Source: Setoptus koraiensis (lineage: Eukaryota > Animalia > Arthropoda). Taken from it: a stretch of DNA of 64,000 bases. Below are positions 12,159 through 61,709 of the stretch, piece after piece; the stretch's first letter is position 1; each line of letters opens with the position of its first letter. The stretch lies in contig CM106585.1 in assembly GCA_048013815.1 (NCBI GenBank), positions 14,074,001-14,138,000 on the forward strand. The letters are read 5' to 3'. The translations under genes and the position numbers were made by a program. The notes below the pieces were generated by a model, which was not told where the DNA came from, searched no databases, and was given only the letters and a program-made list of their open reading frames with translations.

Positions 12159-12658
12159 NNNNNNNNNNNNNNNNNNNNNNNNNNNNNNNNNNNNNNNNNN
12201 NNNNNNNNNNNNNNNNNNNNNNNNNNNNNNNNNNNNNNNNNNNNNNNNNNNNNNNNNNNNNNNNNNNNNNNNNNNNNNNNNNNNNNNNNNNNNNNNNNNN
12301 NNNNNNNNNNNNNNNNNNNNNNNNNNNNNNNNNNNNNNNNNNNNNNNNNNNNNNNNNNNNNNNNNNNNNNNNNNNNNNNNNNNNNNNNNNNNNNNNNNNN
12401 NNNNNNNNNNNNNNNNNNNNNNNNNNNNNNNNNNNNNNNNNNNNNNNNNNNNNNNNNNNNNNNNNNNNNNNNNNNNNNNNNNNNNNNNNNNNNNNNNNNN
12501 NNNNNNNNNNNNNNNNNNNNNNNNNNNNNNNNNNNNNNNNNNNNNNNNNNNNNNNNNNNNNNNNNNNNNNNNNNNNNNNNNNNNNNNNNNNNNNNNNNNN
12601 NNNNNNNNNNNNNNNNNNNNNNNNNNNNNNNNNNNNNNNNNNNNNNNNNNNNNNNNNN
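12159..12658. other. Scaffold gap, 500 N
   Basis: Run of exactly 500 N. Confidence 0.99.
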
Positions 12659-17326
<4,668 letters not shown>

Positions 17327-24500: not shown

Positions 24501-27500
24501 CATTCGCATTTGTAGGGCGACACCTGATTGGAGCATTTGTAGCTACAGCCGTGACTTCCGCTTTGGCATTCGTTAAGTTCGCGCTCAAAAGTTGCGCTAA
24601 AACCTGCCCTATTGACGTCCGAATCGGAGACAAATCTCACCAATAGTTTGTCGGCCGTGGACACAATTTGTTCGGGAACTTTCATGCCGCAATACTTGCC
24701 CAATAGATTGCTAGACAAGCTGTGTCCGTCGCGCACTAAAACATGAAGCGATTATATTGATAGGATTTTATAGTTAAGCCAACGATTGGGGGTCAATTCC
24801 GATGAAAAGTCAATCAGTGAACTTATTATTAGAATAGAATAGCTATGTGTTTTTATGTGTAAACAATGTATATATAGTTGACAACTAACTTACCCTCTAC
24901 GTAGTCGTAGGCGCAGTTGTCGTGACTCTCGAGGTCGAACGAGTCGAATTTAAGCGAAACCTGATACTGTTCGTCCACCTTGATACGCCAAATACATTCC
25001 TTGTTGGCGCGATAATTCTCAGGCCAATTGGGGCTCTGAATGACATTTGTGTTGGCGCCGATTGGGGGCACCTCGTGACGCAAATCGGCGCCATTCTGCT
25101 GCTGACCGTTGGCTACGTTGGTGCCGTTGCCATCTAAGCCAGAGTTAACATTTAAATTAGCATTATCTGGATTAGTTGTTGGTGTAAACGTTGTTGTTGT
25201 TGTCGCTGCTGCTGCTGATGTTGCGCCAGTTGACGTACTGTTTTGACCCGTATTGTGGATGATTATATTATTGGGTGCTGGTGACACTTGCATTTCGGTT
25301 GGTGTGCCCCTGTAGTAGATGTAGCCGCCGCAAATTGTCTCATGGTGGGCGTGAAATCCGCGCTTACCCGCACTCGCCGGGCTAGTCTTGTATGTCACCA
25401 GCATACGATTTCCGCTAGATATAATTGGCTTATCTGGTGCATTATGTCCGCAAATTCTCGCCAACAGTGCCGATTTGTGCCAGTAGCCGTCTCTTATTTC
25501 AAGGTAATCCGTCTGACACAAATGATTGCTTGCAATGGCACTGTTGTTGTTGGGCGCTTGATCTGGTGCCAATGGCACCGTTTGCGCTATTTCCAAGTCA
25601 TTGTTGGTGACGGGCAACTTTGATTGCTCCAGTTTGTTGTTTATTTCCGCTGTCTCAATCGCTATGTCCAAGTCCGTTATCACCAGCTTGATGCGTTCGC
25701 CCAAACTGGCGCTCAATCGCCACTCGCACGTCTCATCTTTCGGCATGTGCTCATGATTTGCTGGCGAAATGTCCAGCGCTGGCTGCACGATTGTCGGCTG
25801 ATTGTTAGTCGATTGATTGACTGGTGATTGATCGGTTGGTGGTTGCAAATTGTCGAGAGCGGATGTGTTTTTGGCGAGCGGCAACAAAGAGGCCGGCGGC
25901 TCGGACGACGACGATTCGTTTCGAGACAAATTGACAATTGTGTCATTGGCCGAGCTGGCGTGAGTTTGAGTGACGTTGTTGGGGCTTTGCTGTTGCTCGT
26001 CTCTTTGCTGCTTGTTGGCTCGCTCGACAAATAATTTGTTGTTGTCAATTAGCGATTTTTGCGACCCGTCTAGGCCGTTGACAGGTGACACTGTCGAGGT
26101 GGACTGTTGTTTGAGGTCGCCAACAGCGCTGCTCACCGCAGCCGGTTGCGCTATAGCTACCGGGCGCGCACTTGTCATAGCTTGTTTGGCTTGTTGTTGT
26201 TGCTGTTGTTGGTGCTGTTGTTGCTGTAGTTGCTGTTGTTGTTGCTGCTCCGTTAGCTTGACATAATTTGCACTGTGAAACGTGCCGTTGGCCTGCTGGA
26301 TGGTTCGGCCGCATTTGGGACATTTGTACAGCATGTTGGTTTGAGCAATGTCGCCCAACGACAAGCGGACCCGCTGACCTATTTCCGGTCGCGTCTTGAC
26401 CAGCATGGGCGGGCTAGCGGTGGTTGGCGCCGATCGGGACACTCTTTGCTGGGTGCCGGTTAGGGGCGTTATCATGGAGTCGAGCTCGTTTGGTACCACC
26501 ATTATGTCGCCATCGACAATCATGATGGCCGGCCCGTGATACGGGCCGGTGCGTGATTTGGTGTTTTGATTGGTCAAGGTTTTGTGAGCAGCGTCAGATT
26601 GCATCATTGATTGCAGTTGCAAATGCATCAGTTGCAATTGGCCGCTATTAGCCCCTGTCTGATTATGATCTTGCTTGGATATGTTAAATTGTTGTTGTTG
26701 TTGTTGTTGCTGCTGCTGCTGCAACAACAATAACTGTTTCAAACGTTGCTGCTGCTGCTCCAATGTCTCCTCTGTATTCAATGGAGCGTGCAAAGGCAAT
26801 ATAGTGTCCAGATAGGTGCTCTTGGCAAAAGTGTTTGTTGCGTAATGCATTATGCTGTCATAATCGTAGGCCAGGCCCAACGAATTCACCTCTTCGCTAG
26901 TTAATTTATTGAAATTATACTCTTGGCCGGCCATGATGTTCTTGTTGATTATTTGTACGTGTTGGTCACGATCTGGCCTAGTGTGCTCGTGCCAAAAGCC
27001 AACAACGTGACCCAGCTCGTGCACGACAATGCCAAATTTGTCGCAATGCTTGCCAATGCTGATGGCCTGGGGACCGTTGCCACGTTTGCCCACAAACGAA
27101 CAACAACCGCACGTTCTCTCTGTGAACACTATGTAGTTGAAATGTTCCTCCGTTCGCTCGATGAATTTAATACAGGTGAAATTTTCCCAATGTCGCATTG
27201 CCTGCTTGAACAGAGCCTTCCTGTCACCGCTAAAACTTGAATCAATTTCATACGGTATGATTGCGTTGTCCCATAGACGCTCTAAGCGGGCTGTGGCCGC
27301 TCTTTTAAGTCGCTGGGGCGACACGGGCCCCGATTTGACTGTCGATGATGCACCTGTGTTGCCCGCGACAACAACAACAACACTAATAGGAGACAACACT
27401 AACAATAGAAAATTTAATAATAATATGACAGCGCTGGCCAATAACACCGGCGACCGCCAACACAGTTGCTTGCGTTCACTGTTCACCTTGACACATTTGA

Positions 27501-33016: not shown

Positions 33017-34063
33017 ATGAATACTAAGGCAAGAGAACTATTTATTATTAAATCAAGAGATTTATCTTGTTTCAATATATTATCGCTCGAATTCCTCCAT
33101 CCCAAGTGCTCAAACAAATACCCGTTCTCTGTGAGGTCTTGTTCACAAGAACACGGCAACCATGAGAGCTCGTCGCAACGATTTGGAGAGGATCCTAAAA
33201 ACCAACAAGCATCCTACAGGCACCAAGAGAACCACAGGCGAAGCTATGAAGAGAAGAAACGTAGATCGCACATGAACTCTGACAAAGATAATGGTAGTAA
33301 CGAAGTAAATACTATTCTAGGTTCCGCAACACATTATAGTAGATTGAGTGTAGATAAAAACGCTAGTTTAGAGAATATCAAATCAGCATACTATGGATTG
33401 TCTAAGATACACCATCCTGATATTGCTGGAAATTCAGAGGAGGCTGCAGAAAAATTTCGTCTTTTGACCGAATCCTATGATATATTGTCCGATCCAAGAG
33501 CCAGATCCGATTATGATGAATCATTAAAAGTGAGCCATCCGCATAGGGATATCATGCGGACTCCATCCGGACGATACAACGATGAATTTCATTTGCATGT
33601 AAGAAAGTCACACGAAGACTTGATCAATATTTTGAAAAATAGATCAGCTCTGGATCTAGAGAGGGAAAAAAATCCTAGAAAGTTCCAAGCTGGACACTTT
33701 GATAGAACCGATGGAAGAAGTAATAACGATGGAGATGATTTACGTGGTCAAGTCAGGAACCTTCGAGCTTCTAAGAGAATTCAGGAAGCTAGACATTACT
33801 ACAATGCGACCAATGATTCGCGACATGATTCTTTCTATTCTAGGCATTTTTGGGCTTATCAGGACAAGAGATTAACAGGCAATTATGGACGAGCAAATTT
33901 TGAGAGTACTCGAGACCCTGAAAGTGATGTCGGAGTGGGCATGATGATGAGCTTTGCCTTGTTGGCCTCAGCTATCGGTTTACTGTCACTTTTCTTGAGA
34001 GACGTTGGCAATTTTGTAGACAAAAAGATGAAGCTGAATTCACAGAAGACAACCGACACATGA
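33017..34063 (+). CDS. DnaJ (J-domain) protein with C-terminal TM helix, DNAJC30-like, 348 aa
   Basis: HYSRLSV...IKSAYYGLSKIHHPD...KFRLLTESYDILSDP..RSDYD J-domain; hydrophobic GMMMSFALLASAIGLLSLFL near the C-terminus. Confidence 0.85.
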   Translation: MNTKARELFIIKSRDLSCFNILSLEFLHPKCSNKYPFSVRSCSQEHGNHESSSQRFGEDPKNQQASYRHQENHRRSYEEKKRRSHMNSDKDNGSNEVNTILGSATHYSRLSVDKNASLENIKSAYYGLSKIHHPDIAGNSEEAAEKFRLLTESYDILSDPRARSDYDESLKVSHPHRDIMRTPSGRYNDEFHLHVRKSHEDLINILKNRSALDLEREKNPRKFQAGHFDRTDGRSNNDGDDLRGQVRNLRASKRIQEARHYYNATNDSRHDSFYSRHFWAYQDKRLTGNYGRANFESTRDPESDVGVGMMMSFALLASAIGLLSLFLRDVGNFVDKKMKLNSQKTTDT

Positions 34064-34212
34064 TTTGGAAACGTTTTCACCAAAGGATTCGTGAGGGCAC
34101 CATCATCTCAATCAAGGTTTGTTAATACTGAAGTTATGTGCTTATATTATTGATTGTTAATTGTTAGTTGACCTATGTTATTGCCGTTTTATTGATGTAA
34201 GATACAGTTTTT

Positions 34213-35507
34213 GCCTCACTATAAATCATAAATTACAATTCAGCTATTTATTAGTTGGTATATATGGTGTTGAAATAAAGCCGAGTGTTGTGAGATATCA
34301 CGACACGTATCTTCGAAAAACCATCGAGTTACAAGTATTTATGCATATAAAGAATAAATGGTGAAATTTCAGAGAATACTTCACCGAGGCTGTTCAGCAA
34401 ACTTGTATTCTATTGAATAATCTCGACCCCAACTAGAGTCAAACATTGCGCCACTTCTTTTCCCTACTATCCACGAAGAATCGTATGAAGTTTGCACGAT
34501 TAAGATGGGGGTAGAATTTGTGGTTACTGCGTTGATCTAACAGACACAACTGACTGTTTACTTTACAACAACAATAATGTTTACAACTAGCAGCATTATC
34601 TGATACATGTGATTCAGCAGAATTTCCAATCAAATTTATCCACTGAGGATATTCCTCATGAAATTCTCATCAATACCTAAGCTTTTTTTATTTTTTCAAC
34701 CACTCAAACAACATCTTCTATGTTTGTTGAATTATTGACCCAATCTAAGATTCATAATTGAAGCATTCCTCACTCAAGTATTTAGTCAAAATTGCCATCA
34801 GTCATGGAGATATACGCGTTTAATTACATTGGATTTGTTGTTATCTCTTACCTGATACTCCTTTATTATATAATTAGATTTGTTCTACGATACAAGCACG
34901 ATGTAGAATCGAATAAGCTAATCACCACAATTACCATAATTTGCTTGTCAGTGGTACTCTTTGGAGCTGCCCTCTTACCCGTAGACATATTTATGGCTTC
35001 GTACGTCAAAGAACCAGATGGTTCGTTCAAGTCTTGGGTTACCAATGAGACGCTGACTAATATAGACAATACAATATATGGGACATACTACAGTAAGTAG
35101 AGACACACTATCGATTAGAATCATCTCATGTTAATACGTTCCTTTAGAACTCGATTAGTAATAACCATTTTCTGCTTTCTGTTTCTATAATCTTATACCA
35201 TCTCTTGATGCTTAGAACTGTACGCGGTCATATTCGCCTTGATATTTTTGGTTCTACCATTCATACATTTCTATTATGATACGGACTCCGATTCGATGGT
35301 CCCTTCTAATCGATTTACTACAGCGTTCATATACACAATCTGTTTTGTTATTGTGGCTGGTATCCTTCTACTAATTGGTTCATTTCTACCATTTAGTCCG
35401 CATCCAACTGGAGATTCGATTTGGGACAAAATCCAGAGCATATTCGCTAGAAACAAATGGAAGGATGCTCTAAATCTTCTATTGACTATTCTCACCACCA
35501 TGGGCCT
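34213..35507 (+). repeat. Left arm of a ~1.3 kb near-identical inverted repeat
   Basis: Reverse complement of 38051-39345 with only scattered SNPs. Contains the LMBRD1 promoter, exon 1, intron 1 and part of exon 2. Confidence 0.92.
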
Positions 35508-36672
35508 AATCAATGTTGCTTGCTACACTGCTGCAGGAATATTTTCTTGGCCTATCGGTCTGATCCGTGGAACTGATAGCATAGCTAAATATGCAGACGA
35601 GCTGGGAGATCGTGAAATGATTCTCAGGATGCGTGTAAATCGACTGACAGAGAAATCCAGACTGTTATCACTCAATCCACGTGAAAGGAATCAATTGAGC
35701 CAGGCGGAAAACGAATTAAGAACACTGGCTCGCGAAGAAATAGCCGTTAACGAATATAGTAACAGTCTCACATACAAACTTCGTAAAATTGTCAGACCAA
35801 CACAAGTCACTATCGGCATTGTAGTTTTGCTTTTATCATGCTTAATTGTCACTACATTACTCATTAACAACATAGATCGAATGATGCATGGACAAGGTCC
35901 TAGAGGGGGTTATATACTGGATAAGCCACATTTCATCAATCCGATGGACTACTTGTTTGTCAAGATACAAAGTTTAGCCATAATCGGACCATTACCTATT
36001 CTTATGATAACTTTGTTCCTTATAGTGGCTACTATTTCCGGCATGCGGAATCTTGGTTTATGGTTACTTTGCTTTAAGGTAAGAAACTAACGGATATCTT
36101 GAATTAATAAATCAATAATCAAAGAGTCTCTTCAATACTAATGTATCCCTTCGATTCACTACCAACAGGTTCACAAGATAAAGGTCCACAAAACGTCACC
36201 CCATGGACTCATCTTCTTTTGTATATCAATGATTTTAACCGTTCTGGCTTACAATGTTTTATTGTATTCTTTGATTCCTCAATTTGTCACCTACGGAGAT
36301 CAAACATACGTTCACAATGAAACAGTAAATAATACTACCCAAACAACGATCAGGCCTTGCGCGTTGGACCAGAATATTGATGTTTGCATTATGACAAGGA
36401 CATCTGTTTTACTTATACGTTTCATGACTCAACTCTGGATATTTGGTGCAGCTTTCTATTGGTTATCTTGGGTCTTTGTAGCGGTGAGTTGAATAAGAAT
36501 AAGCAAAAAAAAAAACAAAAGAAAAGGTACAGATAGGAAATGATTTTTAATTGATATCTCTCCCTCTCTTTTACTTCAGGTCTCAGCTATGACACTGCTT
36601 GTCAAATTTTTCCAATCCAGACGGTCAGCAGTGCACGGTCTCGTATCACAAGAAGAAGAGTTTGAGGAGTAA
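34804..36672 (+). CDS. LMBRD1: Lysosomal cobalamin transporter LMBD1, 519 aa
   Basis: Exons 34804-35092, 35216-36078, 36169-36483, 36580-36672 (GT-AG, phases fit). LLPVDIFMASY, LPFIHFYY, YTAAGIFSWPIGLI, GYIL..P...NPMD, C-terminal WIFGAAFYW; multiple TM helices. Confidence 0.9.
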
Positions 36673-37038
36673 TTCCAGGAAGATTTCAACTTGTTTTAGT
36701 TTACTAAGCATTGTAGATTTAATTAGCATAGATGAATCCAAGTCAATATAGTCAGGATCTAATCATACAATGAATGTGCACGAAATCAGTCCAACTTGTA
36801 TATACTATGTATTCGAATAAAGACCCAATTAAATCAAAAAAGAAAGGGATCTGACCCAAACTGTCAAGTCGCACTGAGCCTATTAGATTGACTCTATCGA
36901 CAGTTCTAGTACGATCAGTAAAATAGGAAAGCCACACATATACATTTTCAGAGTAAATCATGGTTTTTAAGCCAGTTAATTAACAGTTTGCACCGTTTAT
37001 TTGTATACACAAGTTTAGTTATGGTACCTATAGCTGAA

Positions 37039-38754
37039 TCACGCTGAACGTTTTAGAAAACTTTGATGCCGCTCAACCAACTTGTCAACTATGATTGATT
37101 CAATTTCGAGGCCATCCTTCAAGTATACATCTTCTCGACTGTTTCGATCTATGAATAAAACGTGCATTGCTCTAGTTTTCAGTTCGTTGGCTATCACAAG
37201 TTTATGGCCATATCGATCAAGGGCTTTCCGAGACTTGCTCTCAAGAAGTAAATTGTCTGTTTCCAATTTAAACGATACTACGTATGCATCTGGTGCCCAA
37301 AATTTGACCAATGGTTTAAGGAATTTAGGAACTAATTGCAGAGTAAGCCTTAGTGGCTCATCTGAAGGAATTTTATGATGTTTTAGGTCATTTGAGGGTA
37401 TATAAAAATCTGATACGGCAGCAGCTAGATAGAGGATAGACTTTGGAGCTCTCCGATTGAGAACGATCGATAATTCATGTAAATAGTGCATATACTCAGA
37501 TAAATGTACGAATGGAACTTTCAGCAGCCTATTTTGCGTCTTAGAATATTCCAGTAGTGCTGACTGAATATTGGAATCAAGATCAAGACTTGATAGCCCA
37601 GTGTTATTGCTGTCATGACGGAGAGATGAGCACTTAGAGGCCATGTCATCAAACCAAGCATGGTGATCGAAATGACGATGGAAAGGCTCCAATGTTTTCT
37701 TTCTGTATAGAAATATAACTGCATACCCTTTTTTAAGGAAATATTCAGCACTTGCAGCCCCTCTAGTTCCAGCAGAGAAATTGTCAATGAATCGGACAGT
37801 GTTGACTTCAAGGGGTACACTAGTTCCGCCTGAAGTTACGAGAACAAACTTATGTTGCCTTCGTTCTTCATCCAACCTAGAGAAGAACGACTCGACTCTT
37901 TCTTTAACCGCATCAAGATCATCAGGAGCTAATGTTTTCAATTCGTTTTCCGCTTGGCTCAACTGATTGCCTTCACGGGAAGTGGACGAAGTCGGCTTCG
38001 ATTCCTCTCGTAATCGATTTACACCTATTCTCAGTAACATTTCATATATAAGGCCCATGGTAGCGAGAATAGTCAATAGAAGATTTAGAGCATCCTTCCA
38101 TTTGTTTCTGGCGAATATGCTCTGGATTTTGTCCCAAATCGAATCTCTAGTCGGATGCGGACTAAATGGTAGAAATGAACCAATTAGTAGAAGGATACCA
38201 GCCACAATAACAAAACAGATTGTGTATATGAACGCTGTAGTAAATCGATTAGAAGGGACCATCGAATCGGAGTCCGTATCATAATAGAAATGTATGAATG
38301 GTAGAACCAAAAATATCAAGGCGAATATGACCGCGTACAGTTCTAAGCATCAAGAGATGGTATAAGATTATAGAAACAGAAAGCAGAAAATGGTTATTAC
38401 TAATCGAGTTCTAAAGGAACGTATTAACATGAGATGATTCTAATCGATAGTGTGTCTCTACTTACTGTAGTATGTCCCATATATTGTATTGTCTATATTA
38501 GTCAGCGTCTCATTGGTAACCCAAGACTTGAACGAACCATCTGGTTCTTTGACGTACGAAGCCATAAATATGTCTACGGGTAAGAGGGCAGCTCCAAAGA
38601 GTACCACTGACAAGCAAATTATGGTAATTGTGGTGATTAGCTTATTCGATTCTACATCGTGCTTGTATCGTAGAACAAATCTAATTATATAATAAAGGAG
38701 TATCAGGTAAGAGATAACAACAAATCCAATGTAATTAAACGCGTATATCTCCAT
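37039..38754 (-). CDS. PPCS: Chimeric LMBRD1(N-terminal TM1-5 + coiled-coil linker)-phosphopantothenate-cysteine ligase, 530 aa
   Basis: Exons 38754-38466 and 38342-37039. Exon 2 is one open frame running from LMBRD1-derived sequence into the PPCS domain (FVLVTSGGTSVPLEVNTVRFIDNFSAGTRGAASAEYFL, LYLAAAVSDFYIP, HKIPS, VPKFLKPLV..WAPDAYVVSFKLETD, VIANEL). PPCS identity is high confidence; the full-length fusion transcript is inferred. Confidence 0.8.
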
Positions 38755-39345
38755 GACTGATGGCAATTTTGACTAAATACTTGAGTGAGGAATGCTTCAA
38801 TTATGAATCTTAGATTGGGTCAATAATTCAACAAACATAGAAGATGTTGTTTGAGTGGTTGAAAAAATAAAAAAAGCTTAGGTATTGATGAGAATTTCAT
38901 GAGGAATATCCTCAGTGGATAAATTTGATTGGAAATTCTGCTGAATCACATGTATCAGATAATGCTGCTAGTTGTAAACATTATTGTTGTTGTAAAGTAA
39001 ACAGTCAGTTGTGTCTGTTAGATCAACGCAGTAACCACAAATTCTACCCCCATCTTAATCGTGCAAACTTCATACGATTCTTCGTGGATAGTAGGAAAAA
39101 GAAGTGGCGCAATGTTTGACTCTAGTTGGGGTCGAGATTATTCAATAGAATACAAGTTTGCTGAACAGCCTCGGTGAAGTATTCTCTGAAATTTAACCAT
39201 TTATTCTTTATATGCATAAATACTTGTAACTCGATGGTTTTTCGAAGATACGTGTTGTGATATCTCGCAACACTCGGCTTTATTTCAACACCATATATAC
39301 CAACTAATAAATAGCTGAATTGTAATTTATGATTTATAGTGAGGC
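38051..39345 (-). repeat. Right arm of the ~1.3 kb inverted repeat
   Basis: Reverse complement of 34213-35507; the ORF track shows identical or near-identical translations on opposite strands. Confidence 0.92.
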
Positions 39346-40191
39346 CGAAGCTGTTCTCCAGATTGCTTGCTGTTGGACTAAAGCATCTCAGATCAGTTAG
39401 ACAGCAATAACATAGGTCAGCTAACAATTAACAGTCATCAAAATGAGCACATATCGTCCAGAATTGGCAAATCTTGACTGCGATCATGACATTTTCTGAG
39501 ACGGCATTCAGACGACATGCCGGGTTTTTCGTCTGTTGTCTTCCATTAATCGGCTCTACTTCCTTCTTTCACCGATATAAGACACTTTTCAGAAAGTTGA
39601 GAGATTAGGTTTCCGGCCTCATCACAATGATGAATCACACAATCTCGCTGGACAATGCACAGTGAGCTAATTCAATAGACTGCCGCATTGTCGGTGAGCA
39701 GCCCACAACATGTTTCTTCTTCTTTTTTCTTCGAAGATGACTGCAGCAAGCGGCGAACATCAGCTGTTCACAAAATGGAAGCACGAGTCTCCATTGAACG
39801 ATTGCACCTTGCTTTTCACTCTTTTTGCACTTCAATGATATTCGCACTCGTCACTTGACATTTGTGTTAATTTCATCTCTGACTCAATCAACTTTATATT
39901 TAACTGGATGATATTTACTCCGACATAAATCACGATCATCCCGATTCTACAAATATTTTAGCTTCAAAACAATCATAATATTATATGATTTATTTTTAAA
40001 ATAATAGGCATACAATATTACTTAATACAAAGGACGGCTGCGGATTCCCCTCACGCTCGGCTCCGATTCACTATTGTCTTATTGACACCACTAGTTATCA
40101 GATCAACCTATTAGTCCTCAGCACTACTGCAATCAACTCCTACTTAACAACTCTACTTTTGCACTCTGTCGCACCAACAACTACCAATAGA

Positions 40192-41441
40192 ATGGATATA
40201 TTCAGTGAACAAGTCATTTCAAATCGGGTTGACCTTTGGTGTCACTTCAAGAGACACCCATCATTCGGTAACTCATCTAAGAAGCCACACCGACGAGTAG
40301 CCAAATTCACTTCATCACCATACCATTATCATACATTCTTCTACATACTAATTTTTAGCTTCATTTTGTATCAACAGCAACAAATAGTTCGATCACAGTA
40401 TGCTCAAAACGCTCAGAATATCCATGATCTTATTCATAAGCGTGAGCACTCATTAGTCAAGCCTTATCAAGGTTCCGGTATGGTAAGTCCTAGGACCGTA
40501 TGAAAAAAACAAGAACGAAAAGATTTGATTATCATTATTATTTGTGTATTAACTTGCATCTTCACCTTGTGTTGACTTTTTACCCACTATCATTATAGAC
40601 AGTGCCTAATTGGGAATTTTTTGGCTCAACAGTTGTTACCAGCAACTATATCCGACTGACACAAGATATGCAAAGTCGTCAGGGCGGACTCTGGAACACC
40701 CAATACTATAAATCAAAATACTGGCAAGTAGAGGTTGCCTTCAGGGTATCTGGACACGGCACTGATTTATTTGGTGACGGATTTGCTCTATGGTATGTCC
40801 GCGATCCACCTCAAGCCGGACCCATATTTGGTAATAAAGACTACTTCGTTGGCCTTGCTGTTTTTCTTGACACATACGCCAACCAGAACGGAGCCCACTC
40901 TCACGGGCACCCGTATATATCAGCCATGGTCAACAATGGAACATTACATTACGATCACGATCTTGATGGCACTCATTCTCAATTAGCCGGATGTGAGTGC
41001 AAGTTTAGAGGTCTAGATCATGAAGCCAGAGTTCTAGTAAGATATCTCAACGACAAAATATATGTTAAAACCGATATCGATAACAGAGGAGAATGGCAAG
41101 ATTGCTTCGAAGTGAATGATGTCTATTTACCCACCAATTATTATTTTGGTATAACAGCAGCCACTGGTGATCTTAGTGATAATCATGATATACTTTCCGT
41201 CAAAATGTCAGAGCTGTCGCCTGCCTTGAATGAGATAAGACAAGTGAAGAATGATGACCTTCCCCGAGCCGAACATCAGGCACCTCATCGTGACAGGGTA
41301 GACGACATTCCAAGCGGCATGCCAGCGTTGAGGAAGTTTTTCATTATAGTCTGTGTCATTGTGGCAGCGTTGGCCGTTGCCGGCACTGGATACTTCGTTT
41401 ACACGAGCCGTCAACAAAATTCAAGGAAACGATTCTATTAA
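40192..41441 (+). CDS. LMAN2L: VIP36/VIPL L-type lectin (LMAN2/LMAN2L), 377 aa
   Basis: Exons 40192-40482 and 40599-41441. KREHSLVKPYQG, PNWEFFGST.VTSNYIRLT, GDGFALWY, DTYANQNG, HPYISAMVNNGTLHYDHD.DGT, TM helix and C-terminal RKRFY. Confidence 0.92.
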
Positions 41442-51300: not shown

Positions 51301-54124
51301 GCGTGCCAATTTCTCGACCGGCTTCTTCTCACACGAGTCACTCTATACTGTGGCTGGCTCTAAAACAAAACTCGTGAGAGTTGCTCTAATTGAAACCTTC
51401 TGGCCCTATCTGCTCTCAATAAACTCAATAGACGCTAACGAGCCAGAGAGCTAACCATCAGCCGTCATTATCGTCATCAGCAATAGGCAAGCAGCAAAGG
51501 GAGAGAGTCCTTTGTCGGCATCGTCGATAAACTAATTATACCCGTAGTGACTATTCCATTAGCGCATACTTTATATCATCATATGATGTTTTTATTTATT
51601 ATATTCACGAACACCGACACACAATGTTGGTGTATAGAAGAGTGACATTACAATGTTCAATCTTGTCAGCTCGGCGCACTAACATAGCCCAGATCTTGAT
51701 TGTCTCACATCTCACACAACTTTCGCTCCCAACTTTGTCAAATTAAAATCATTATCGCTACACTCTTATCGCCTTTAAAACTGCCGTTGCCGCCACACCG
51801 ATCATAGCAACAACAGCAGCAACAACGGCGGCAACAGCAGCAACGACAGCAACAACAACAGCGGCATCAGCAGCATCATCTGTCAGCGTCGGTGGAGATA
51901 AGAAAGGCGGAGGCGTATCAATAATTCATTCACTTGACAAAACAGACGTTTACAAGGCTAGCCTGGCAGCGGCGACAACACTGTCAGACATCAAATATAC
52001 GAAACAGCCACCAGCAATACTATGATAATGCGATAATACTCGGCTGATGTGTGGATATATGGATACATGGGCGCCGTATGAATATGTGGATATGCCATAT
52101 GATACGACGCCACAACAGCGACAACAACACTGTTGCTACTCCACTTATGAACCATGCCAAATGGTACACGTTACTATTGTTGTTGTTATTATTACTATTA
52201 CTATTTAAATAATTCCAACCGTATCAAAGTTGTACCATCAGGCAACACAGTAAACAATAGATTTACTTGAGCTCGGGCTCACGATTGTGATTGTGACTGC
52301 GAGATCTCCATTTGCAAGCTACCAACGAGCGTTAGTGTGTCGCCGAGTCGGTCTAAATAGTCAGAGCACTGACACACATGGGCAAAGCTCCGTTATTATT
52401 AGCACCGATTCCGAGCTGACTCGCCATTGTTGTCCAATGTGTACTATCGTGTGTGTTTGCATCGTGTTGTTACGCAATGGTTGGCCTGTAGCAACACGAT
52501 TGCAATGAATTAAAGTTGCTGTCATTATTGCATTGTTAGCGCAGGCAAAATAGATAGACAGTTGAGCTCTCAATCCATCAAAACACTCACCTTGTTTGCT
52601 GTTGGACATAGGCCACTCAGTTGGAGATGGATGGCTCGCACAATCGGACGTCGGATTTCGACGAGAGAAACGAGCAAACGAGGCAAGCGAACAAGTGTCC
52701 GACAAGACAGATATGTATCACATAATGGGCATTACATTGTTGCTGTTTTGGCTGTTTGCTTGTTGGCAGCGGTGGTCAATTTAACATGGGCCAAACATTC
52801 GAGGCGAATCATCCAAGCGAATCAAAGCGATCGATGCGGCCACCACCGCTTGACTGGAATGGTCAGCTTGGGCCACTTCCTTGCAACAGAATTGTAGTTT
52901 GTATTTGGCACGAAGTTGCTCTGAAACACTCTCTCTCCAAATACAAACCAGGCTCTTGCAGGTTAATGGCATGAGCAATTTGCATAAACATGTAACATGG
53001 TATTGTGTTTGCATGTCGTGTTTGAACACCCACCAGGATGAACAACAACAACAACGACAACAACAACAACGACAACAATATCGGCCGCGCTAGAGTAGTA
53101 GTTAAAAGTCAATAGCGGTTGTGTGCAAGGTTATGGTCGAAGCCCTTCTGTCCCTAATTGAGTTTGCATGATTGACTGTTGCCTGGTGCCAGCAGAGAAG
53201 GAGGAGAAGAAAAAAGTCGCTTTCTCTGTTGTTGTATGTTCGCAAACAAACAGAAAGAGAAACGGAAAACGCAGTTCGCACAAGCTCGCTACGCCGACAC
53301 ATTTAGCCGACATTTTTTTGGCTTGCGTATTTATATTTAACAAATCTGCTAGCACTTTCTAGCGAGTAAGCGACCAAGCGAAAAATACAAAAATATTAAA
53401 ATGTAGATATTAGTGATATATTAATAGTGTAAAGTGGTTAACATTAATAGCAAATTACAGTGAAGAGAAAGAAAGAAAGAACGAACGAACGAACGAAAAA
53501 GGAACATATCTCAATCATGATGATGATAATCGCGCGCTACAGCCAAGTTTACATGTCAGTGTTTGCTCAAGTCTGCCGGGGATAATTCATTCACTCACGT
53601 TGAGCTTGTGGTGTGAGTCAAGTGCTGCCATAGTTAGTCATTGAAAATAGTTGCTGCCTGTAATAGCAACTGCTGGCTTGCACTTAAGTGTTACATAACA
53701 TGATGATGTTCTCATCATCAGTCAGTCATCATCAGTGTTATAACCTCTAACTCTCTCTCTCTCTCTAACTCACTCATTCTATCTTTTATTTAATGTAGCT
53801 AGATGGTTGGTTCACAGCAGCAGCGGCAGCAGCAACTGTGGCCAGACGCAGCAATAGCAACTTTCCCAGAATGAGTCAAACAACTAGACAGAATCTATTT
53901 GATCATGATTGTCAATTGCACACACACACACACCAATGACTCCAGTCGTTGGAGCGGCTCACAGGCGAGCGCGAACTCGAAACGAATGACTTAATGATAG
54001 ATGGATAGATAGACAGACAGACGGACGGATATTATTGTAGAGATGATATGTTATCATCGCCAGAATCAAAATAAAAGGCTACTATTTATCTAGGCGAGGT
54101 GCAGTGGCAGTTGTCGTTGTCAGT

Positions 54125-56174: not shown

Positions 56175-56248
56175 GTCGTTGTTGTCGTTGTTGCTGTTGC
56201 CGTTGTTGCTGTTGCCGTTGTTGCCGTTGTTGCCGTGGTCGTTGCCGG
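56175..56248. repeat. (GTT/GCC/GCT)n compound trinucleotide repeat
   Basis: gttgttgtcgttgttgctgttgccgttgttgctgttgccg... array. Confidence 0.8.
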
Positions 56249-59200
56249 CTGCTGGCGACCATTGCATCTTGTTATGAGATGTTGTTAGTTTGTGTTGTGT
56301 GTTCTCATGCAATTATTTATTATTAGATCTGCACACATTTCGGCCTGCTCTGGCGAGAAGAGAGAAGAGGCATCATTAGCTCACTGCAGCGCATCCTTCT
56401 CGGCTAGTCAATTTGGGGCGCGCAATCACAAGATTACATCACTGACGATGCTTCCATTGCATAACAACAACAGCGACGACAACAACAACAACAAGTCACA
56501 GTGTACATCTAATGAAGCGACAAATCCCTGGCTCGCTTGCAACGCAACTGGCGCTTCAAACTGGACGCATGATAACAACAACAACAACAGCAAGATTAAT
56601 TGGTTGGCGGACGCCGCCGCCGCCGCCAAAACAACTATCCGCTGCTTCGTTGCAAGTTAATGCGGCCCGGATAATGCCAGCGAACTGTGTGTATGCAAGC
56701 GCAAGTTGTAAGCCCATGCGAAAGCCGACGGCTCATGGGCCCCGTCCACGTTGGCACCATTAGGCAAGGAATGCGCCAGCAATGCAAACATTGGCAACAT
56801 TTCTTCAACTGTCTATAGTTGGCATAACATTGACAGCTAACAAGTCGATGCAATGTAACCCCGCTGCTCGGCCCGCTGACCAATTGACCAGATCACTGCC
56901 GACTGGTCAATCCAACGACGACACAGCCGACGACACGGCCAACGACACAGCCAATGATATGGCCGATGGTGCGCCCGACGATATTGGCAATGATATGACA
57001 GCGGGCCAGACAAGTTGATTAGTGTTGCTGGTGGCGATGATTAATTTCATCATGAGAGCATCAGAGAGAAACAGAACGGCGAATAGCGAACAGTCTCCGC
57101 GGCTGGCTCACACAAGCTCAGCAAATTTGAGTTGGGCGAAACAAGCGGAACTAAGTCAACAACTTGGCTTAATTAACTTGTTATTATGTTTGTGGCCGAT
57201 GTTGGCACACAAAAATAATCGCTTGGGTGCCGCATGGTGCTCGCTGTTGTCATTTGTTCGTCTCGAGCAGCTCACCGGCTGACTTTTTGCTAAGCTCGCA
57301 AGCGCGAGGGAGCCCTCCCATGGTTCGGCGTGGCGCTTTAAGCCGGCCGAGCTGGCATCATTTGGCCAAAAGTAATGAGATTGCCTGCGATGGCCAACAG
57401 AATATTTGCCAACAGCTTGCTGGATATTATTAAATTCAATCTCTTGTTGCGATTGCGTCTTGTTCGTTTTGCGCTGCGTCGCGTCGTCGTAACCTGTTTA
57501 TTGGCGCTGTCGCTATAACTGTTGTTAAAAGTGTTGCCCAAATGGGCTAGACACAATCGGCGAGTCAGATCGCTCGGCCTGTCGGGCTAGCAACTCGCGA
57601 GCTGGCAACACTCAAGTGGCTCCAATGGCTCCAATGGCCGAAATGGCCGAAATGGCCGAAATGGCTCAAATTGGCAACTCTCGGTAGGGCGACTGCAAAA
57701 TGGGCATCGTGCGCTGGCGATTGTGCGATTGTGCGCCGGGCGAGCTGGCCACGGCCGCCAACAACAGGCCGGCCGGTTGATCCAGATTAACGATGCGACG
57801 ATTCAGTAATTCGCTCAGTCAATTAAGATTAACTAGCTGACATTTGAGCTCGGCCGTCTCGTCAATCATCGTCCATCAGTTGGCGACGATCGGCGGCCAC
57901 TTGTTGCTGTTGTCGCTGGTTGCTGTCGTTGTTCGAGAGTGCCGTCCGTTTGTCCGTTTGTCGGTTGCACTGTCTGTGTGTCGCCTATTCGCCTAGTCAC
58001 AAATTGTGAGCGTCACAATTGTTATTATTATCACTATTACATTATTCGCGCTTGTTAGCCGGCCCGGCCGACGGCAAGCCGGGCACCCTGACCAAAGGGC
58101 CGACTCACGAAACAATGCCGGCGTTGGCCACGTGAGACGGCGCCGGCCGCTCGGCTGCTATTTTTAATTTGATTTATGTCGACCAACCGCAAAAGGGACG
58201 CTATAAATCAGCCAGATAAAGAGGGGCTCGCTCAGGCCGATTCACATCGGACGGCCGCTTCGGTTTGAGCGATTCGCTCCGAGAGAAAAACACAAGCTAA
58301 AAAGTGTTTGCAATTCTCTCCGACTGACCGACTGTCCGGCTGTCCGGCTGTCATAAACTTAGTAAAGTTTGAATTCCTGCGCGTCATTGTTTTACCTCTT
58401 GTGCTTCTGTTCTTCTCGTCCTCTCCCCTAGCCTCGGCTCGGCCTCTCCGTCGGTCTCTCGCCTTGGTCGCCGTCGGGCCGGCCGACACCTCGGACATCG
58501 TTCGATGCGCACAAGCCGCATAATTGGCATTAATGTTGCCTTCTACGGTGCACTTGCCAACCACTGGCCAAGCTAAATTTAGCCATTACGTAATCCAACG
58601 AAATCATATTTATGTATCGTTTATCCTTGACTTGGCAGCTAAACTTGGCGTGTGAGTGCACAAACAATGGCCGCCGAGTCGCAGCTTGGCCACAGACGGA
58701 TTAGGCGCTGATTGAACGTCCGGCAACGACGTTCAGCTACATCTAAAGCAACAACATCGTTGCCAACAACATAATATAAAATATATAACCGACAACAAGC
58801 AGCGCCCCCTCGTTGCCGTGCTCGGCTGACACTTATCGGTGATCGGTGATTGGCCATCCATAATTAGCTCTGCTGCTCTCTATCAATCTGTGCCATGGAT
58901 TCTATGCTGGCCGCATTGGGCGGCTGCGATAGCTTGACCCTACAAATAATGTTGGTGTTGTTACTTTTTTCTTTATTTATTACTGGTTATTTTGTGTTTG
59001 CTCAGCATCCATGGAGCAGTGCATGTTGTCAGTTTTTCGGGTCTATTGAAACCGCTCACTTGTGAGATTAATAATGGTCGATCGCATGCTAGCCAGTCGC
59101 AAATCAACACCGGCCACTTGGCGCCCAGCAAACAAGACGCTCGCCCAAACTCGAGGTGGTCTCACCGGCAGCAACAACACCAACAGCAAAATCGACGACA

Positions 59201-61709
59201 GCAGCAACAACAACAGAACCGACGACAGCAACAACTGGTCGCCATTGAAGCGAGTCAATTGAAGCGAGCCTATGCAAACAAGTGCGAACTGTCGGAATGC
59301 AGCCAGTGGGCCGCGAAGCCGAGTTGCTGTTGGACCGGACTGCAACTCTCAGAGCTGGCCGCACTGGCCGGGCTTGTCGGACTTGTGCGACTGTCGGACA
59401 GACTGCAACTGGAAAGGAATGTTTGCCAGCGTTTGTGGCCGTCGTCGGTTCGTGACGACGAGACTCGGGCAAGAAATATGTCGGTCAACACAGCACAATT
59501 GTTTGCCAATGGGCCAATAAACAATGTTTGTCAACTATTTGTCACCGTGTCTCGCAAACAAGCGCCACCTGACGCCCATTTCAGGCTGTGTCCGCAAGGC
59601 GAATAGCGGCCCACAAATTGGCGCCAGTTGGCACTTACACCTCCAAATTGGAGGCTCCAATGCATCACGATAGATACGTGGATATATCAAACATGGATAT
59701 GTCATGACATAAATTCGTATAAACGTATATTCTTGTCTCGTCAAGCGGCAGTCAGTCAGTGGATTCAGTGAATACAGCGAATGACATGGTGAATTTGCAA
59801 ACCGAAACTGAAACTGATGCCAGCCGAGCATTGGTCATAGCCAGTTATATCGAGAGCACAACATCATTTGCATATTAACATATGTATGCTAATGCGCAAG
59901 TCGAGCGAGCGCTTGTTTTGGTCTTGGCGGCTTGGCGTTGTCCACTCTAACAATTGACCCTAGTGGCCAGTGTCAGTGCGACCGGGGCTAACAAGTGTCG
60001 GCGGGGCCATCGTTGTCGGTCATCTGCCAGATTCGATAATAATACTGTTAATATCATATCGAATGTCGGCCTGCATTGGTGTGACACTGCACGCAATGCA
60101 GCCACACAATAACGGTCAACGGGACAGGTTACACAACAGTTGACTATTAACCATACGCCAATACGTTAACAGGTGCACAAAGAGTATTTTACATTATTGC
60201 AATATTCACAACATTGTCAGTTGCGAAATTGAAATTTCTTGAGATTTTTACAGTTTTTTTCTTCGTGTTTCTTTGCGTTCAATTTGATATTGTGAGCGTT
60301 CGCTCGTTTGCTCTCTCACAATGTCAAATATGTAGTGTCTGTGGTCCAGTTGGGCGAGCGAACGGTAGCCGCCAGGTTAGCGGATTATTAATGTGTGTGA
60401 GTCATGGATGTGGCCAGTTTGTCCGACACCCAGTCCATTAATATCTAGACAAAATATCTGGTCTAAATATCAAGTTTGTATCTGATTTATGTGCGCTGGC
60501 GCCCTCTAGAGCGGCCCGTTATTCATTATGTTGTGTTCACACGTGGTTATTGTCCCAACGGACAGCTCCTTTCAAGACAGCGAGGGTCAAGCGATGCAAA
60601 GCGACAGTGTTTACATTATAATCTGACACACTATCTAATGGCCTGGCACACACATAATTTCATAATGATATTCATGATCTGTAATATTCTGACAATTTTG
60701 AGATCGATCGCCTGTCGGGCAGTCAGCGGGCTGTCAGTGAGCTTGTTTGGCCCTGTCGGACCTGTTTTGTTTGTCACGCAACAAGCCGATACAGGCCGAT
60801 GCAGGCTGATACAGGCTGACGTAATCCAGTCGGCCGGCCATGCACTGCAAATGGCTTGTATTTATGTGTGAATATAATCGTCTGGCAGAGGCGATAAAAG
60901 ACTCGATGGTGCGAGGCCTACGCACTTTCGACGGCGACACTAGCAATATCTGACAACGTTGTGAGTGTGGCAAAAACAAGAAAGAAAAAAACTAGACAGC
61001 CAAAACTTTGCATTGCTTGGTAAGTAGAATGCATTAGCCAGTGAGATAATAGTTGTTATGTATTGGCAACTGACAACTAATTGATTGTTTCCCATTTAAC
61101 CATTTGAGCCCCCGTGTTCGCTAATAGCCTTGCAGCGCATAATGTTCGCCATTCATCATTGCTGATTGTTCGCCCCCGACTGGCTGACATTTGATTACAG
61201 TGTTTAGCGATGTTGAATTGTCTCGCTCGTTTATTGCCCGCATGCCAGCACATAAATGCCAGTACATAAATGGGTAGACGGATAAATGGATAAATGGATA
61301 AATGGATGATGATATAAACAAAACAAGACAATGCTGACAAGTTGATCGTAGTGAGATCACAACAGCGACTTGCAGAGTTCACCCGACCCTGTATGCATAG
61401 GCCGTATATTGGGCTGCTATTGCCATTCGATGCATGATTTAATAGATGATATACAACAATAATAATGGCATAATCCGTGCCAATGAGCCATACACACACA
61501 ACTAATGCATACATAATCGCAAGCAATCAGAGCTTGCGTCTCTCCAGTTGCCGATGGTGCCGTTGGCATCATCACGAGGGGCCAAGATGGAGCCGATGCA
61601 AGCTGAGGCCTCGCTGCGAAACTTGTCGCCTAAGTTGTCGCCCGGCCTCTTATGTAAGTGATTGCTTTTTGTGGCCAATACTTGTTGTTGCGGTGTCTTG
61701 TTTGCTCGA

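What the first reader, a model, noticed from the sequence alone, without database searches (positions are those of the whole stretch)
37039..38754. In-frame LMBRD1-PPCS chimera: candidate membrane-anchored CoA-biosynthesis enzyme
Seen: a duplicated, inverted copy of the LMBRD1 promoter, exon 1, intron 1 and 5' exon 2 runs in one frame, through a net 33-codon deletion and a diverged LMBRD1 coiled-coil linker, into a complete PPCS domain. The domain starts near 37926 (APDDLDAVKERVESFF...FVLVTSGG) and has no native PPCS start Met. Intact LMBRD1 sits head-on 0.4 kb away. Known: LMBD1 is a 9-TM lysosomal protein whose large post-TM5 loop is cytosolic, and PPCS is normally a soluble dimer joining cysteine to 4'-phosphopantothenate. 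Inference: the fusion tethers PPCS to the cytosolic face of lysosomes/endosomes, a possible cysteine source, and puts it under the LMBRD1 promoter. I know of no such fusion.
Basis: partly seen in the sequence, partly recalled or inferred. Interest (0 to 1): 0.92.

Follow-up and report, generated by a model that had tools for sequence, protein, structure and literature searches.

The report
LMBRD1–PPCS chimeric gene in a mite
In this eriophyoid-type mite, the gene for the second enzyme of coenzyme A synthesis (PPCS) has lost its own start and promoter and now begins with an old inverted partial copy of the neighbouring membrane-protein gene LMBRD1, so its most likely product is a membrane-anchored PPCS, though no expression data could be checked.

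Summary
A 1312-nt inverted repeat (34204-35515 and 38043-39354, 15 differences) copies the LMBRD1 upstream region, exon 1, intron 1 and the 5' part of exon 2. After an in-frame 99-nt deletion and a diverged 126-nt LMBRD1 linker, the copy runs into a complete PPCS domain. The spliced ORF is 530 codons.

The repeat is not a recent duplication or a mis-assembly. A 943-nt core without differences is flanked on both sides by collinear homology of only 72% and 81%, and linker dS is about 1. That pattern fits an old duplication kept uniform by gene conversion.

The PPCS domain keeps every residue invariant in 18 arthropod PPCS, and its branch is not longer than those of related mites. Relatives have unfused PPCS with their own ATG, and no LMBR1+DFP protein turned up in two very large protein searches.

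Most likely product: five transmembrane helices, a flexible linker and a cytosolic PPCS, under an LMBRD1-type promoter. The lysosome and cysteine idea is not supported. The site aligned with the human lysosome-sorting motif is deleted, and the ABCD4-binding loop has degenerated.

Transcription, use of the first AUG and the absence of a second PPCS gene remain untested. Interest is moderate: a new domain architecture produced by a known kind of gene birth.

The parts
39385..39458 (-). Outer, diverged flank of the right arm. It is homologous to 34130-34203 at 81% identity and separated from the arm by a 30-nt indel.
   Evidence: 14 differences in 74 nt; Fisher p 2e-11 against the core
38043..39354 (-). 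Right arm of the inverted repeat: a near-identical copy of the LMBRD1 upstream region, exon 1, intron 1 and the 5' part of exon 2.
   Evidence: 15 differences in 1312 nt; none in the central 943 nt
38755..39354 (-). Copied LMBRD1 upstream region, the presumed promoter of the chimera.
   Evidence: The copy covers nearly the whole 740-nt DnaJ-LMBRD1 intergenic region. Promoter activity is inferred, not shown.
38466..38754 (-). Chimera exon 1 (ATG 38754-38752), encoding TM1, TM2 and a lumenal loop with one NET sequon. It is identical to LMBRD1 exon 1.
   Evidence: weak Pfam LMBR1 hit
38343..38465 (-). Chimera intron 1 (GTAAGT...TTAG), identical to LMBRD1 intron 1.
   Evidence: The junction was validated in the intact gene by gapless alignment with an unspliced relative, P0122.
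38045..38342 (-). 5' part of chimera exon 2, encoding TM3, TM4 and the shortened TM5 (LNLLLTILATMGLIYEMLL). The site of the 99-nt (33-codon) deletion relative to LMBRD1 lies at about 38045-38050.
   Evidence: Kyte-Doolittle 1.84 against 1.82 for the native TM5; helix at ORF residues 73-105
37927..38044 (-). Diverged LMBRD1-derived linker, from the coiled-coil/cytosolic-helix region. It is 72% nt identical to 35613-35738 and contains the in-frame Met198.
   Evidence: dS 1.06, dN 0.23; disordered SKPTSSTS stretch followed by a helix
37042..37926 (-). Complete PPCS catalytic domain (DFP, PF04127), starting at PDDLDAV.
37039..37041 (-). Stop codon of the chimera.
36996..37001 (-). AATAAA polyadenylation-type signal about 40 nt after the chimera's stop.
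34804..36672 (+). Intact LMBRD1 gene. Exons are 34804-35092, 35216-36078, 36169-36483 and 36580-36672. The product is 519 aa with 9 hydrophobic segments.
   Evidence: end-to-end alignment with P0122; human LMBD1 24vc, E 4e-40
34204..35515 (+). Left arm of the inverted repeat, inside and upstream of the intact LMBRD1 gene.
35516..35612 (+). Segment of intact LMBRD1 that is missing from the chimera. It encodes the C-terminal half of TM5 and the KYADEL site, which aligns with human 233-YERL.
33017..34063 (+). DnaJ-domain membrane protein gene, the conserved neighbour of LMBRD1. It is used here as the orientation marker.

Best explanation
An old partial inverted duplication of LMBRD1 replaced the native 5' end of this mite's PPCS gene.

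- What was copied: the LMBRD1 upstream region, exon 1, intron 1 and exon 2 up to the first cytosolic helices.
- What was lost: the PPCS promoter, start codon and roughly the first 5-25 codons.
- The locus now encodes a 530-aa protein. It has five LMBRD1 transmembrane helices (N terminus lumenal), then a linker of about 40 aa with a Ser/Thr-rich hinge, then a complete PPCS domain facing the cytosol.
- Recurrent gene conversion from or with the intact LMBRD1 gene 2.5 kb away keeps the promoter and the TM1-TM5 module nearly identical to LMBRD1. The chimera should therefore be transcribed like LMBRD1.
- In the spliced mRNA the first AUG is the LMBRD1 AUG. It has a purine at -3 and a G at +4, and is followed by nine more AUGs before Met192. 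Ribosome scanning should therefore give the full fusion.
- The LMBRD1 module appears reduced to a membrane anchor plus spacer. The sorting-motif position is deleted, the ABCD4-binding loop has degenerated, and TM6-9 are absent.

Shown: the genomic structure, its age, the gene conversion, the intact PPCS domain and the absence of the fusion in sampled relatives.
Inferred: transcription from the copied promoter, use of AUG1, membrane insertion, cytosolic orientation and enzyme activity.
For: Structure and frame.

Old duplication plus gene conversion:
- The core has 15 differences in 1312 nt, with a 943-nt stretch free of differences.
- The collinear flanks are 72% and 81% identical (Fisher p 7e-28 and 2e-11).
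- Both tract ends coincide with indels, and linker dS is 1.06.

The linker is native LMBRD1 sequence, conserved in the relatives P0121 and P0122.

PPCS domain:
- It is complete and matches human PPCS 1p9o/7edz at E 9e-64.
- Every residue invariant among 18 arthropod PPCS is retained.
- Its branch from the node shared with other eriophyoids is 0.92, against about 1.2-1.5 for the others, so it is not accelerated.

The native PPCS start is absent. Relatives start 5-25 residues upstream of the P-x-DLD motif, each with its own ATG and intergenic region.

Membrane anchor and linker:
- Five hydrophobic segments remain, including a TM5 of unchanged hydropathy.
- The AlphaFold model shows a continuous TM5-to-linker helix, a disordered hinge and a confident PPCS core.

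Translation: ten AUGs precede Met192, and AUG1 lies in the context GTCATGG.

Retention: the 1.4-kb arm has been kept in a lineage known for extreme genome streamlining (PMC7738191).
Against: - No transcript, read or proteomic data could be consulted.
- Because gene conversion keeps the N-terminal module intact whether or not it is translated, its open frame is weak evidence. Only the in-frame 99-nt deletion counts independently, and that has a 1 in 3 chance of happening anyway.
- Met192 lies in the context ACCATGG. A protein started at Met198 would be 333 aa, the normal length of PPCS in relatives (324-343 aa), so a soluble product from an internal transcription start is possible.
- Whether a second, canonical PPCS exists elsewhere in the genome could not be tested.
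- The assembly has gross artefacts 20 kb away (a 500-N gap and 4.7 kb of poly-C).
- The N-terminal module of the AlphaFold model has low confidence.
Confidence: 0.6

Rival explanations
1. The locus makes a soluble PPCS of normal length. Transcription starts inside the copied LMBRD1 sequence (intron 1 or exon 2) and translation starts at Met192 or Met198. Only the last 38-45 residues of LMBRD1-derived sequence then form the N terminus of the enzyme. The upstream copy is untranslated, and gene conversion alone keeps it intact.
For: A product started at Met198 would be 333 aa, against 324-343 aa in relatives. Met192 lies in the context ACCATGG. The native PPCS N terminus is variable and poorly conserved, so any short leader may do. 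Gene conversion explains the open frame upstream without translation.
Against: The complete LMBRD1 upstream region is present and nearly identical, so it should drive transcription from the normal start. Ten AUGs then precede Met192. An internal promoter would sit in sequence identical to the intact LMBRD1 gene, and nothing indicates one. A dispensable 1.4-kb arm would be expected to be lost in a streamlined genome over the time implied by a dS near 1 (PMC7738191). The 99-nt deletion is in frame and leaves a TM-length hydrophobic segment.
Confidence: 0.2
2. The chimera is a redundant or decaying extra copy. A canonical PPCS elsewhere in the genome does the housekeeping work, and this locus is silent, neutral or newly specialised. 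This would be a jingwei-type young gene or a relic.
For: Only 64 kb of the genome could be searched, and it holds one PPCS. PPCS is not next to LMBRD1 in any relative examined, so it moved here at some point, possibly as a copy.
Against: The PPCS domain has no stop or frameshift. It retains all invariant residues and its branch is not longer than those of orthologues, which is unexpected for a redundant or dead copy of this age. It sits in the tree exactly where the species' orthologue should, as sister to the other eriophyoid PPCS. A polyadenylation-type signal follows the stop.
Confidence: 0.12
3. Assembly artefact: the right arm is a mis-joined haplotype or a fold-back read artefact, and the real PPCS has a different 5' end.
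For: The assembly contains a 500-N scaffold gap followed by 4.67 kb of about 96% C at 12159-17324. An inverted repeat at 99% identity is a classic warning sign.
Against: The arms are separated by 2.5 kb of unique sequence rather than forming a hairpin. Identity falls gradually from 100% through about 93-97% to 72-81%, across collinear flanks on both sides. A mis-join or a missed-adapter read cannot produce that pattern. The 72% linker, which no allele could explain (dS about 1), is physically continuous with PPCS, so at least the linker-PPCS fusion is real whatever the status of the arm.
Confidence: 0.05

Closest known systems
Eukaryotic phosphopantothenoylcysteine synthetase (PPCS / yeast Cab2; Pfam DFP PF04127; PDB 1p9o, 7edz, 6ai8)
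   Same: The catalytic domain is full length, collinear with human PPCS residues 25-307, and keeps all residues invariant in arthropod PPCS. In the tree it is placed as the orthologue for a deep-branching eriophyoid.
   Different: Known PPCS are soluble proteins of about 310-370 aa with their own start. Here the first 5-25 residues and the promoter are replaced by 236 residues of LMBRD1 origin with five predicted transmembrane helices. No other LMBR1+DFP protein was found.
LMBD1 / LMBRD1 (lysosomal cobalamin transport escort protein; Pfam LMBR1 PF04791; PDB 24vc)
   Same: The promoter, exon 1, intron 1 and TM1-TM5 are nearly identical to the mite's own LMBRD1. The linker is homologous to the cytosolic helix region that follows TM5.
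   Different: The chimera has only 5 of the 9 TMs. The C-terminal half of TM5 and the position of the human AP-2/lysosome-sorting motif are deleted. The loop aligned with the human ABCD4-binding loop has degenerated (PMC13434180). It should not be expected to act as LMBD1.
Chimeric genes born from a partial gene duplicate that donates promoter and 5' exons to another coding sequence (for example Drosophila jingwei; from my own knowledge, not checked here)
   Same: A duplicate of gene A's 5' part supplies the promoter, start codon and N-terminal module to the enzyme domain of gene B, while the parent gene A stays intact nearby.
   Different: Here the donor copy is inverted, lies 2.5 kb from its parent and evolves in concert with it. 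The recipient appears to be the species' orthologous housekeeping enzyme rather than an extra retrocopy, though that is not proven. No poly(A) remnant or other mark of retroposition was seen.
Inversions with inverted duplications at their breakpoints (staggered-break model described for Drosophila; from my own knowledge) and flip-flop inversion between inverted repeats
   Same: Inverted arms flank a unique segment. The intact LMBRD1 is inverted relative to its conserved neighbour DnaJ when compared with a related mite, while the partial copy keeps the orientation seen in that relative.
   Different: The order of events cannot be reconstructed from one genome, and no remnant of the PPCS 5' end was detectable.

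Membership tests
PPCS (DFP domain, PF04127) | Pfam DFP hit above the curated cut-off | tested here: met
   65.1 bits against a 22-bit cut-off
PPCS (DFP domain, PF04127) | Full-length collinear match to a solved eukaryotic PPCS | tested here: met
   Human 7edz/1p9o residues 25-307 (7edz, 311 aa) and 26-309 (1p9o, 313 aa), E 9e-64; yeast Cab2 6ai8, E 1e-55
PPCS (DFP domain, PF04127) | Conservation of residues invariant across arthropod PPCS (TSGGT, VRFIDNFS-G-RG, AAAVSDF, HK, FKLET, ANEL blocks) | tested here: met
   All invariant columns of the 19-sequence alignment include the window protein
PPCS (DFP domain, PF04127) | Own start codon and a soluble single-domain architecture of about 310-345 aa | tested here: not met
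   No Met between spliced residue 198 and the inside of the domain. The ORF continues upstream into LMBRD1 sequence.
PPCS (DFP domain, PF04127) | Ligase activity on 4'-phosphopantothenate and cysteine | not testable with these tools
   Needs an enzyme assay or complementation of a cab2/PPCS mutant
LMBD1 / LMBR1 family (PF04791) | Pfam LMBR1 hit above the curated cut-off | tested here: not met
   The chimera's pieces score 20.3 and 22.4 bits against a 31.9-bit cut-off. The exon 2 ORF of the intact gene scores 38.4.
LMBD1 / LMBR1 family (PF04791) | Nine transmembrane helices with a cytosolic helix bundle after TM5 | tested here: not met
   The chimera has 5 hydrophobic segments and the intact gene has 9. 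Only part of the helix region is kept.
LMBD1 / LMBR1 family (PF04791) | Sorting-motif position (human 233-YERL) and ABCD4-binding loop (human R259-K270) | tested here: not met
   The aligned KYADEL site lies in the deleted 33 codons. The aligned loop LSLNPRERNQLS has become TSSTSREGNQLS (PMC13434180). The test is by homology only.
Chimeric gene formed from a partial duplicate (jingwei type) | The parent gene is retained and the partial copy supplies promoter, 5' exon(s) and start codon in frame with a foreign domain | tested here: met
Chimeric gene formed from a partial duplicate (jingwei type) | The recipient part is a retroposed extra copy | tested here: inconclusive
   PPCS has no introns in relatives either. 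No poly(A) tract follows the stop. A second copy could not be searched for.
Chimeric gene formed from a partial duplicate (jingwei type) | A chimeric mRNA and protein are made | not testable with these tools
   No RNA or protein data were available
Concerted evolution (gene conversion) between inverted paralogous segments | A near-identical tract bounded by collinear, much more diverged homology | tested here: met
   Identity is 99% in the arms (1312 nt, with a 943-nt stretch free of differences), against 72% and 81% in the flanks. The tract ends fall at a 99-nt and a 30-nt indel.

The most novel reading that the evidence does not exclude
The chimera is this mite's only PPCS. An essential, normally soluble step of coenzyme A synthesis would then be carried out by an integral membrane protein. 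Its promoter and five-helix anchor are kept in lock-step with LMBRD1 by gene conversion. The inverted-repeat locus can also flip without breaking either gene.
Probability: 0.4. Interest if true: 0.65.

Novelty: new variant of a known kind. Interest (0 to 1): 0.5.

Why it matters
If the fusion is expressed and is the sole PPCS, it is a natural experiment in moving an essential cytosolic enzyme onto a membrane. It would bear on how far CoA synthesis depends on where its enzymes sit.

It is also a clean, datable example of gene birth in an extremely compact animal genome. One rearrangement gave an enzyme a new promoter and N terminus, and concerted evolution has since tied two unrelated genes to one regulatory and N-terminal module.

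On the practical side, annotation pipelines are likely to mislabel the locus as LMBRD1-like, or to split it and report PPCS as missing or truncated.

Tried and rejected
- Word-based homologue search restricted to the LMBRD1-derived residues 1-140 found nothing, so that search was wasted. The exhaustive HMMER search on the intact exon 2 then gave the LMBRD1 relatives.
- Odd-length LMBRD1 hits were checked for a DFP domain. None had one; one (P0164) has a histone deacetylase domain (Pfam) plus an LMBRD1-like stretch matched.
- The bacterial-type promoter/terminator scan is irrelevant for a eukaryote and is not used.
- tRNA and Rfam scans of the window found nothing.
- I searched for remnants of a native PPCS 5' end, or of relatives' PPCS neighbours (TMEM120, GDT1, aldolase, SUZ12), around the arms. 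Nothing significant appeared, so the order of rearrangements stays open.
- A combined PPCS+LMBRD1 alignment intended for structure prediction misaligned the LMBRD1 pieces and was dropped. The model was built from the PPCS alignment only, so its N-terminal part has low confidence.
- Literature searches for LMBRD1 with PPCS, or for a transmembrane PPCS fusion, returned nothing relevant.
- A recent duplication with fast linker evolution is rejected. Synonymous and non-coding flank divergence is far too high next to a core without differences.
- A fold-back read artefact is rejected because of the 2.5-kb unique spacer and the diverged flanks.
- The source species was not identified. A deep-branching eriophyoid such as a phytoptid would fit the tree and the 500-N scaffolding gaps, but this is a guess.
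Full report
**1. What is in the sequence**

The minus-strand ORF 38319..37039 encodes 426 aa. Pfam gives a weak LMBR1 hit on residues 2-139 and a clear DFP/PPCS hit (65 bits against a 22-bit cut-off).

Upstream on the same strand lies a 96-codon ORF starting at ATG 38754, also LMBR1-like. It ends at a GTAAGT donor.

Repeat finding shows inverted arms at 34204-35515 and 38043-39354: 1312 nt, 99% complementary. Next to them are two weaker collinear pairs, 35613-35738 with 37919-38044 (72%) and 34130-34203 with 39385-39458 (81%).

A base-by-base alignment shows what the right arm contains: the region upstream of LMBRD1, exon 1, intron 1 and the first 300 nt of exon 2. A 99-nt gap follows, then the diverged linker, and homology ends at ...TLA / PDDLD, about 37926.

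Splicing exon 1 (38754-38466) to exon 2 (38342-37039) gives a 530-codon ORF.

The intact LMBRD1 gene on the plus strand has four exons spanning 34804-36672 and encodes 519 aa. It aligns end to end, without gaps at the exon junctions, with an unspliced 515-aa relative, and it matches human LMBD1 (PDB 24vc, E 4e-40). The intron shared with the chimera is therefore real.

The two genes converge. Their stops are 366 nt apart, and each is followed by an AATAAA signal.

**2. Not recent and not an artefact**

The 15 differences between the arms lie only in the outer 260 nt (7) and the inner 110 nt (8). The central 943 nt have none.

Beyond the arm ends, homology continues in register but at only 81% (14 differences in 74 nt, non-coding) and 72% (35 in 126 nt, coding). 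Fisher tests against the core give p = 2e-11 and 7e-28. Each arm end coincides with an indel, of 30 nt and 99 nt.

In the linker, dS is 1.06 and dN is 0.23 over 41 codons.

No single recent duplication, allelic mis-join or fold-back read artefact produces a core without differences that grades into strongly diverged collinear flanks. The standard explanation is an old duplication whose middle is repeatedly homogenised by gene conversion, with the tracts stopping at heterologies.

The linker-PPCS junction lies in the old, unconverted part, so the fusion itself is old.

The assembly is not flawless. It has a 500-N gap followed by 4.67 kb of about 96% C at 12159-17324. I still put the artefact explanation at about 5%.

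**3. Which way the sequence moved**

The linker (LR..VNRL...NQLSQAENEL.TLA) is native LMBRD1 sequence. The same coiled segment follows TM5 in the LMBRD1 of related mites (P0121, P0122) and of more distant animals. It aligns with the cytosolic helix region of human LMBD1 (PMC13434180).

The chimera's linker is 68% identical to the window's own LMBRD1 but only about 32% identical to P0121. It also shares derived residues with the window's LMBRD1. These identities are my own count on the alignments.

The duplication, or the last conversion of the linker, therefore happened after this lineage split from the sampled relatives.

**4. The PPCS part**

It matches human PPCS (7edz/1p9o) over residues 25-307 of 311 (E 9e-64). 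It retains every column invariant among 18 mite, spider, tick and insect PPCS.

In a maximum-likelihood tree it is sister to all 41 eriophyoid-type PPCS, including that of Aceria tosichella (SH-aLRT 99). Its branch from the shared node is 0.92, against roughly 1.2-1.5 for the others.

The domain is therefore under normal purifying selection and behaves like the species' orthologue, not like a decaying or fast-evolving extra copy.

Relatives' PPCS are 324-343 aa. They start 5-25 residues upstream of the conserved P-x-DLD motif, each with its own ATG.

In four relatives the PPCS neighbours are TMEM120, GDT1 or aldolase, never LMBRD1.

No protein combining LMBR1 and DFP appeared among the best hits in the 5.8-billion-protein collection. 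None appeared among 150 LMBRD1 representatives from 1.84 billion proteins either. As far as the data reach, the fusion is specific to this lineage.

**5. What the product should look like**

Hydropathy gives five segments with Kyte-Doolittle values of at least 1.8 in the chimera and nine in LMBRD1. The shortened TM5 (LNLLLTILATMGLIYEMLL) scores 1.84, against 1.82 for the native one.

By homology with the solved human LMBD1 topology, the N terminus is lumenal and the helix bundle after TM5 is cytosolic (PMC13434180). An odd number of helices therefore places PPCS in the cytosol, where its substrates are.

The AlphaFold model was built from PPCS homologues only (mean pLDDT 71). In ORF numbering it shows:
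- a continuous helix over residues 73-105 (TM5 into the linker);
- a low-confidence hinge at 106-113 (SKPTSSTS);
- a helix at 114-129;
- the PPCS N-terminal helix at 135-151;
- much of the PPCS core at pLDDT 80-94, with a few low-confidence loops.

**6. Is the fused frame used?**

This could not be tested directly.

For it:
- The whole LMBRD1 upstream region is present and essentially identical (about 600 nt in the arm plus 74 nt of flank, out of a 740-nt intergenic region). It should therefore fire.
- The intron is identical.
- AUG1 lies in the context GTCATGG and is followed by nine more AUGs, seven of them out of frame, before Met192. Scanning ribosomes would make the fusion.
- The native PPCS promoter and start are gone.
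- The 99-nt deletion is in frame.
- A 1.4-kb arm has persisted in a lineage noted for genome streamlining (PMC7738191).

Against it:
- Conversion would keep the upstream frame open even if it were untranslated.
- Met192 lies in the context ACCATGG.
- A product started at Met198 would be 333 aa, the usual PPCS length.

I put the full fusion at 0.6 and the soluble, internally started PPCS at 0.2. A redundant copy with a canonical PPCS elsewhere gets 0.12 and an artefact 0.05.

**7. The lysosome and cysteine interpretation**

[quoted passage not shown] That position aligns with KYADEL in the mite LMBRD1, which lies inside the 33 codons deleted from the chimera.

The human loop that binds the ABCD4 nucleotide-binding domain (R259-K270; PMC13434180) aligns with LSLNPRERNQLS in the mite LMBRD1. 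In the chimera this loop reads TSSTSREGNQLS.

Most amino-acid changes in the linker fall on the chimera's branch when polarised with P0121 and P0122.

TM6-9 are missing, including the beta-strand region that contacts ABCD4.

The LMBRD1 module therefore looks reduced to an anchor plus spacer. Which membrane it reaches cannot be predicted, and nothing supports a link to lysosomal cysteine.

**8. Origin**

In a related mite (Logan contig L003) the order is SUZ12, LMBRD1 (+), DnaJ (-), with LMBRD1 and DnaJ convergent.

The window's DnaJ gene (33017-34063) is the full-length orthologue of that gene (31% identity over 347 aa, E 7e-35). Here, however, the intact LMBRD1 follows it in tandem, while the partial copy in the chimera has the orientation seen in the relative.

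Two models fit this. One is an inversion with a staggered break across the 5' half of LMBRD1, which would create the inverted duplicate and the fusion in a single step. The other is a later flip of the 2.5-kb spacer by crossover between the arms, which leaves both genes intact. Both models are inference, and no remnant of the PPCS 5' end was detectable.

**9. Novelty and verdict**

The mechanism of birth is known: a partial duplicate donates a promoter and 5' exons. The architecture LMBR1(TM1-5)+DFP, a membrane-anchored PPCS and the long-term concerted evolution of the shared module with its parent gene were not found in the databases or the literature searched.

I class it as a new variant of a known kind, with interest 0.5.

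Noticed in passing
window 12159-17324: A 500-N scaffold gap (12159-12658) is followed by 4.67 kb of about 96% C with scattered A (12659-17324). This is clearly an assembly or sequencing artefact. It cuts a gene whose ORF runs up to 12158 and creates spurious 1700-1900-aa ORFs in five frames.
   Followed up: partly
window 33017-39458 compared with L003 1813-4592: LMBRD1 and a DnaJ-domain membrane protein are neighbours in both species, but the intact LMBRD1 is inverted relative to DnaJ in the window. The inverted arms would also allow flip-flop inversion of the 2.5-kb spacer without breaking either gene, so the locus may be polymorphic in orientation.
   Followed up: partly
window 35516-35612 and 37975-38010: The 33 codons missing from the chimera include the site aligned with the human LMBD1 AP-2/lysosome-sorting motif (YERL). 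The loop aligned with the human ABCD4-binding loop has become Ser/Thr-rich in the chimera.
   Followed up: yes
window 36673-37038: The two convergent genes have stops 366 nt apart, with AATAAA signals at 36816-36821 (+) and 36996-37001 (-). The 3' UTRs are therefore short and probably do not overlap. The 69-aa ORF at 36752-36961 (-) is probably spurious.
   Followed up: partly
window 40192-41441 (+): An L-type (legume-like) lectin gene of the ERGIC-53/VIP36 kind (PF03388, E 5e-82) diverges from the chimera. It apparently has one short intron near 40490-40600. About 730 nt of unassigned sequence separate it from the right arm.
   Followed up: no
protein P0164 (652 aa): A protein in the representative library combines a histone deacetylase domain with an LMBRD1-like piece. 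It is probably a merged gene model in some other organism.
   Followed up: no
window 26195-26247, 51806-51875, 56177-56244, 59175-59235: Short CAA/CAG-type (or complementary) tandem repeats, probably coding poly-Gln or similar tracts.
   Followed up: no
L002 8549-11071 and the P0001 contig: In two related mites PPCS is divergently paired with TMEM120. This micro-synteny is absent from the window and from the two other relatives (L001: GDT1; L007: aldolase), so the PPCS neighbourhood is rearranged often in this group.
   Followed up: partly
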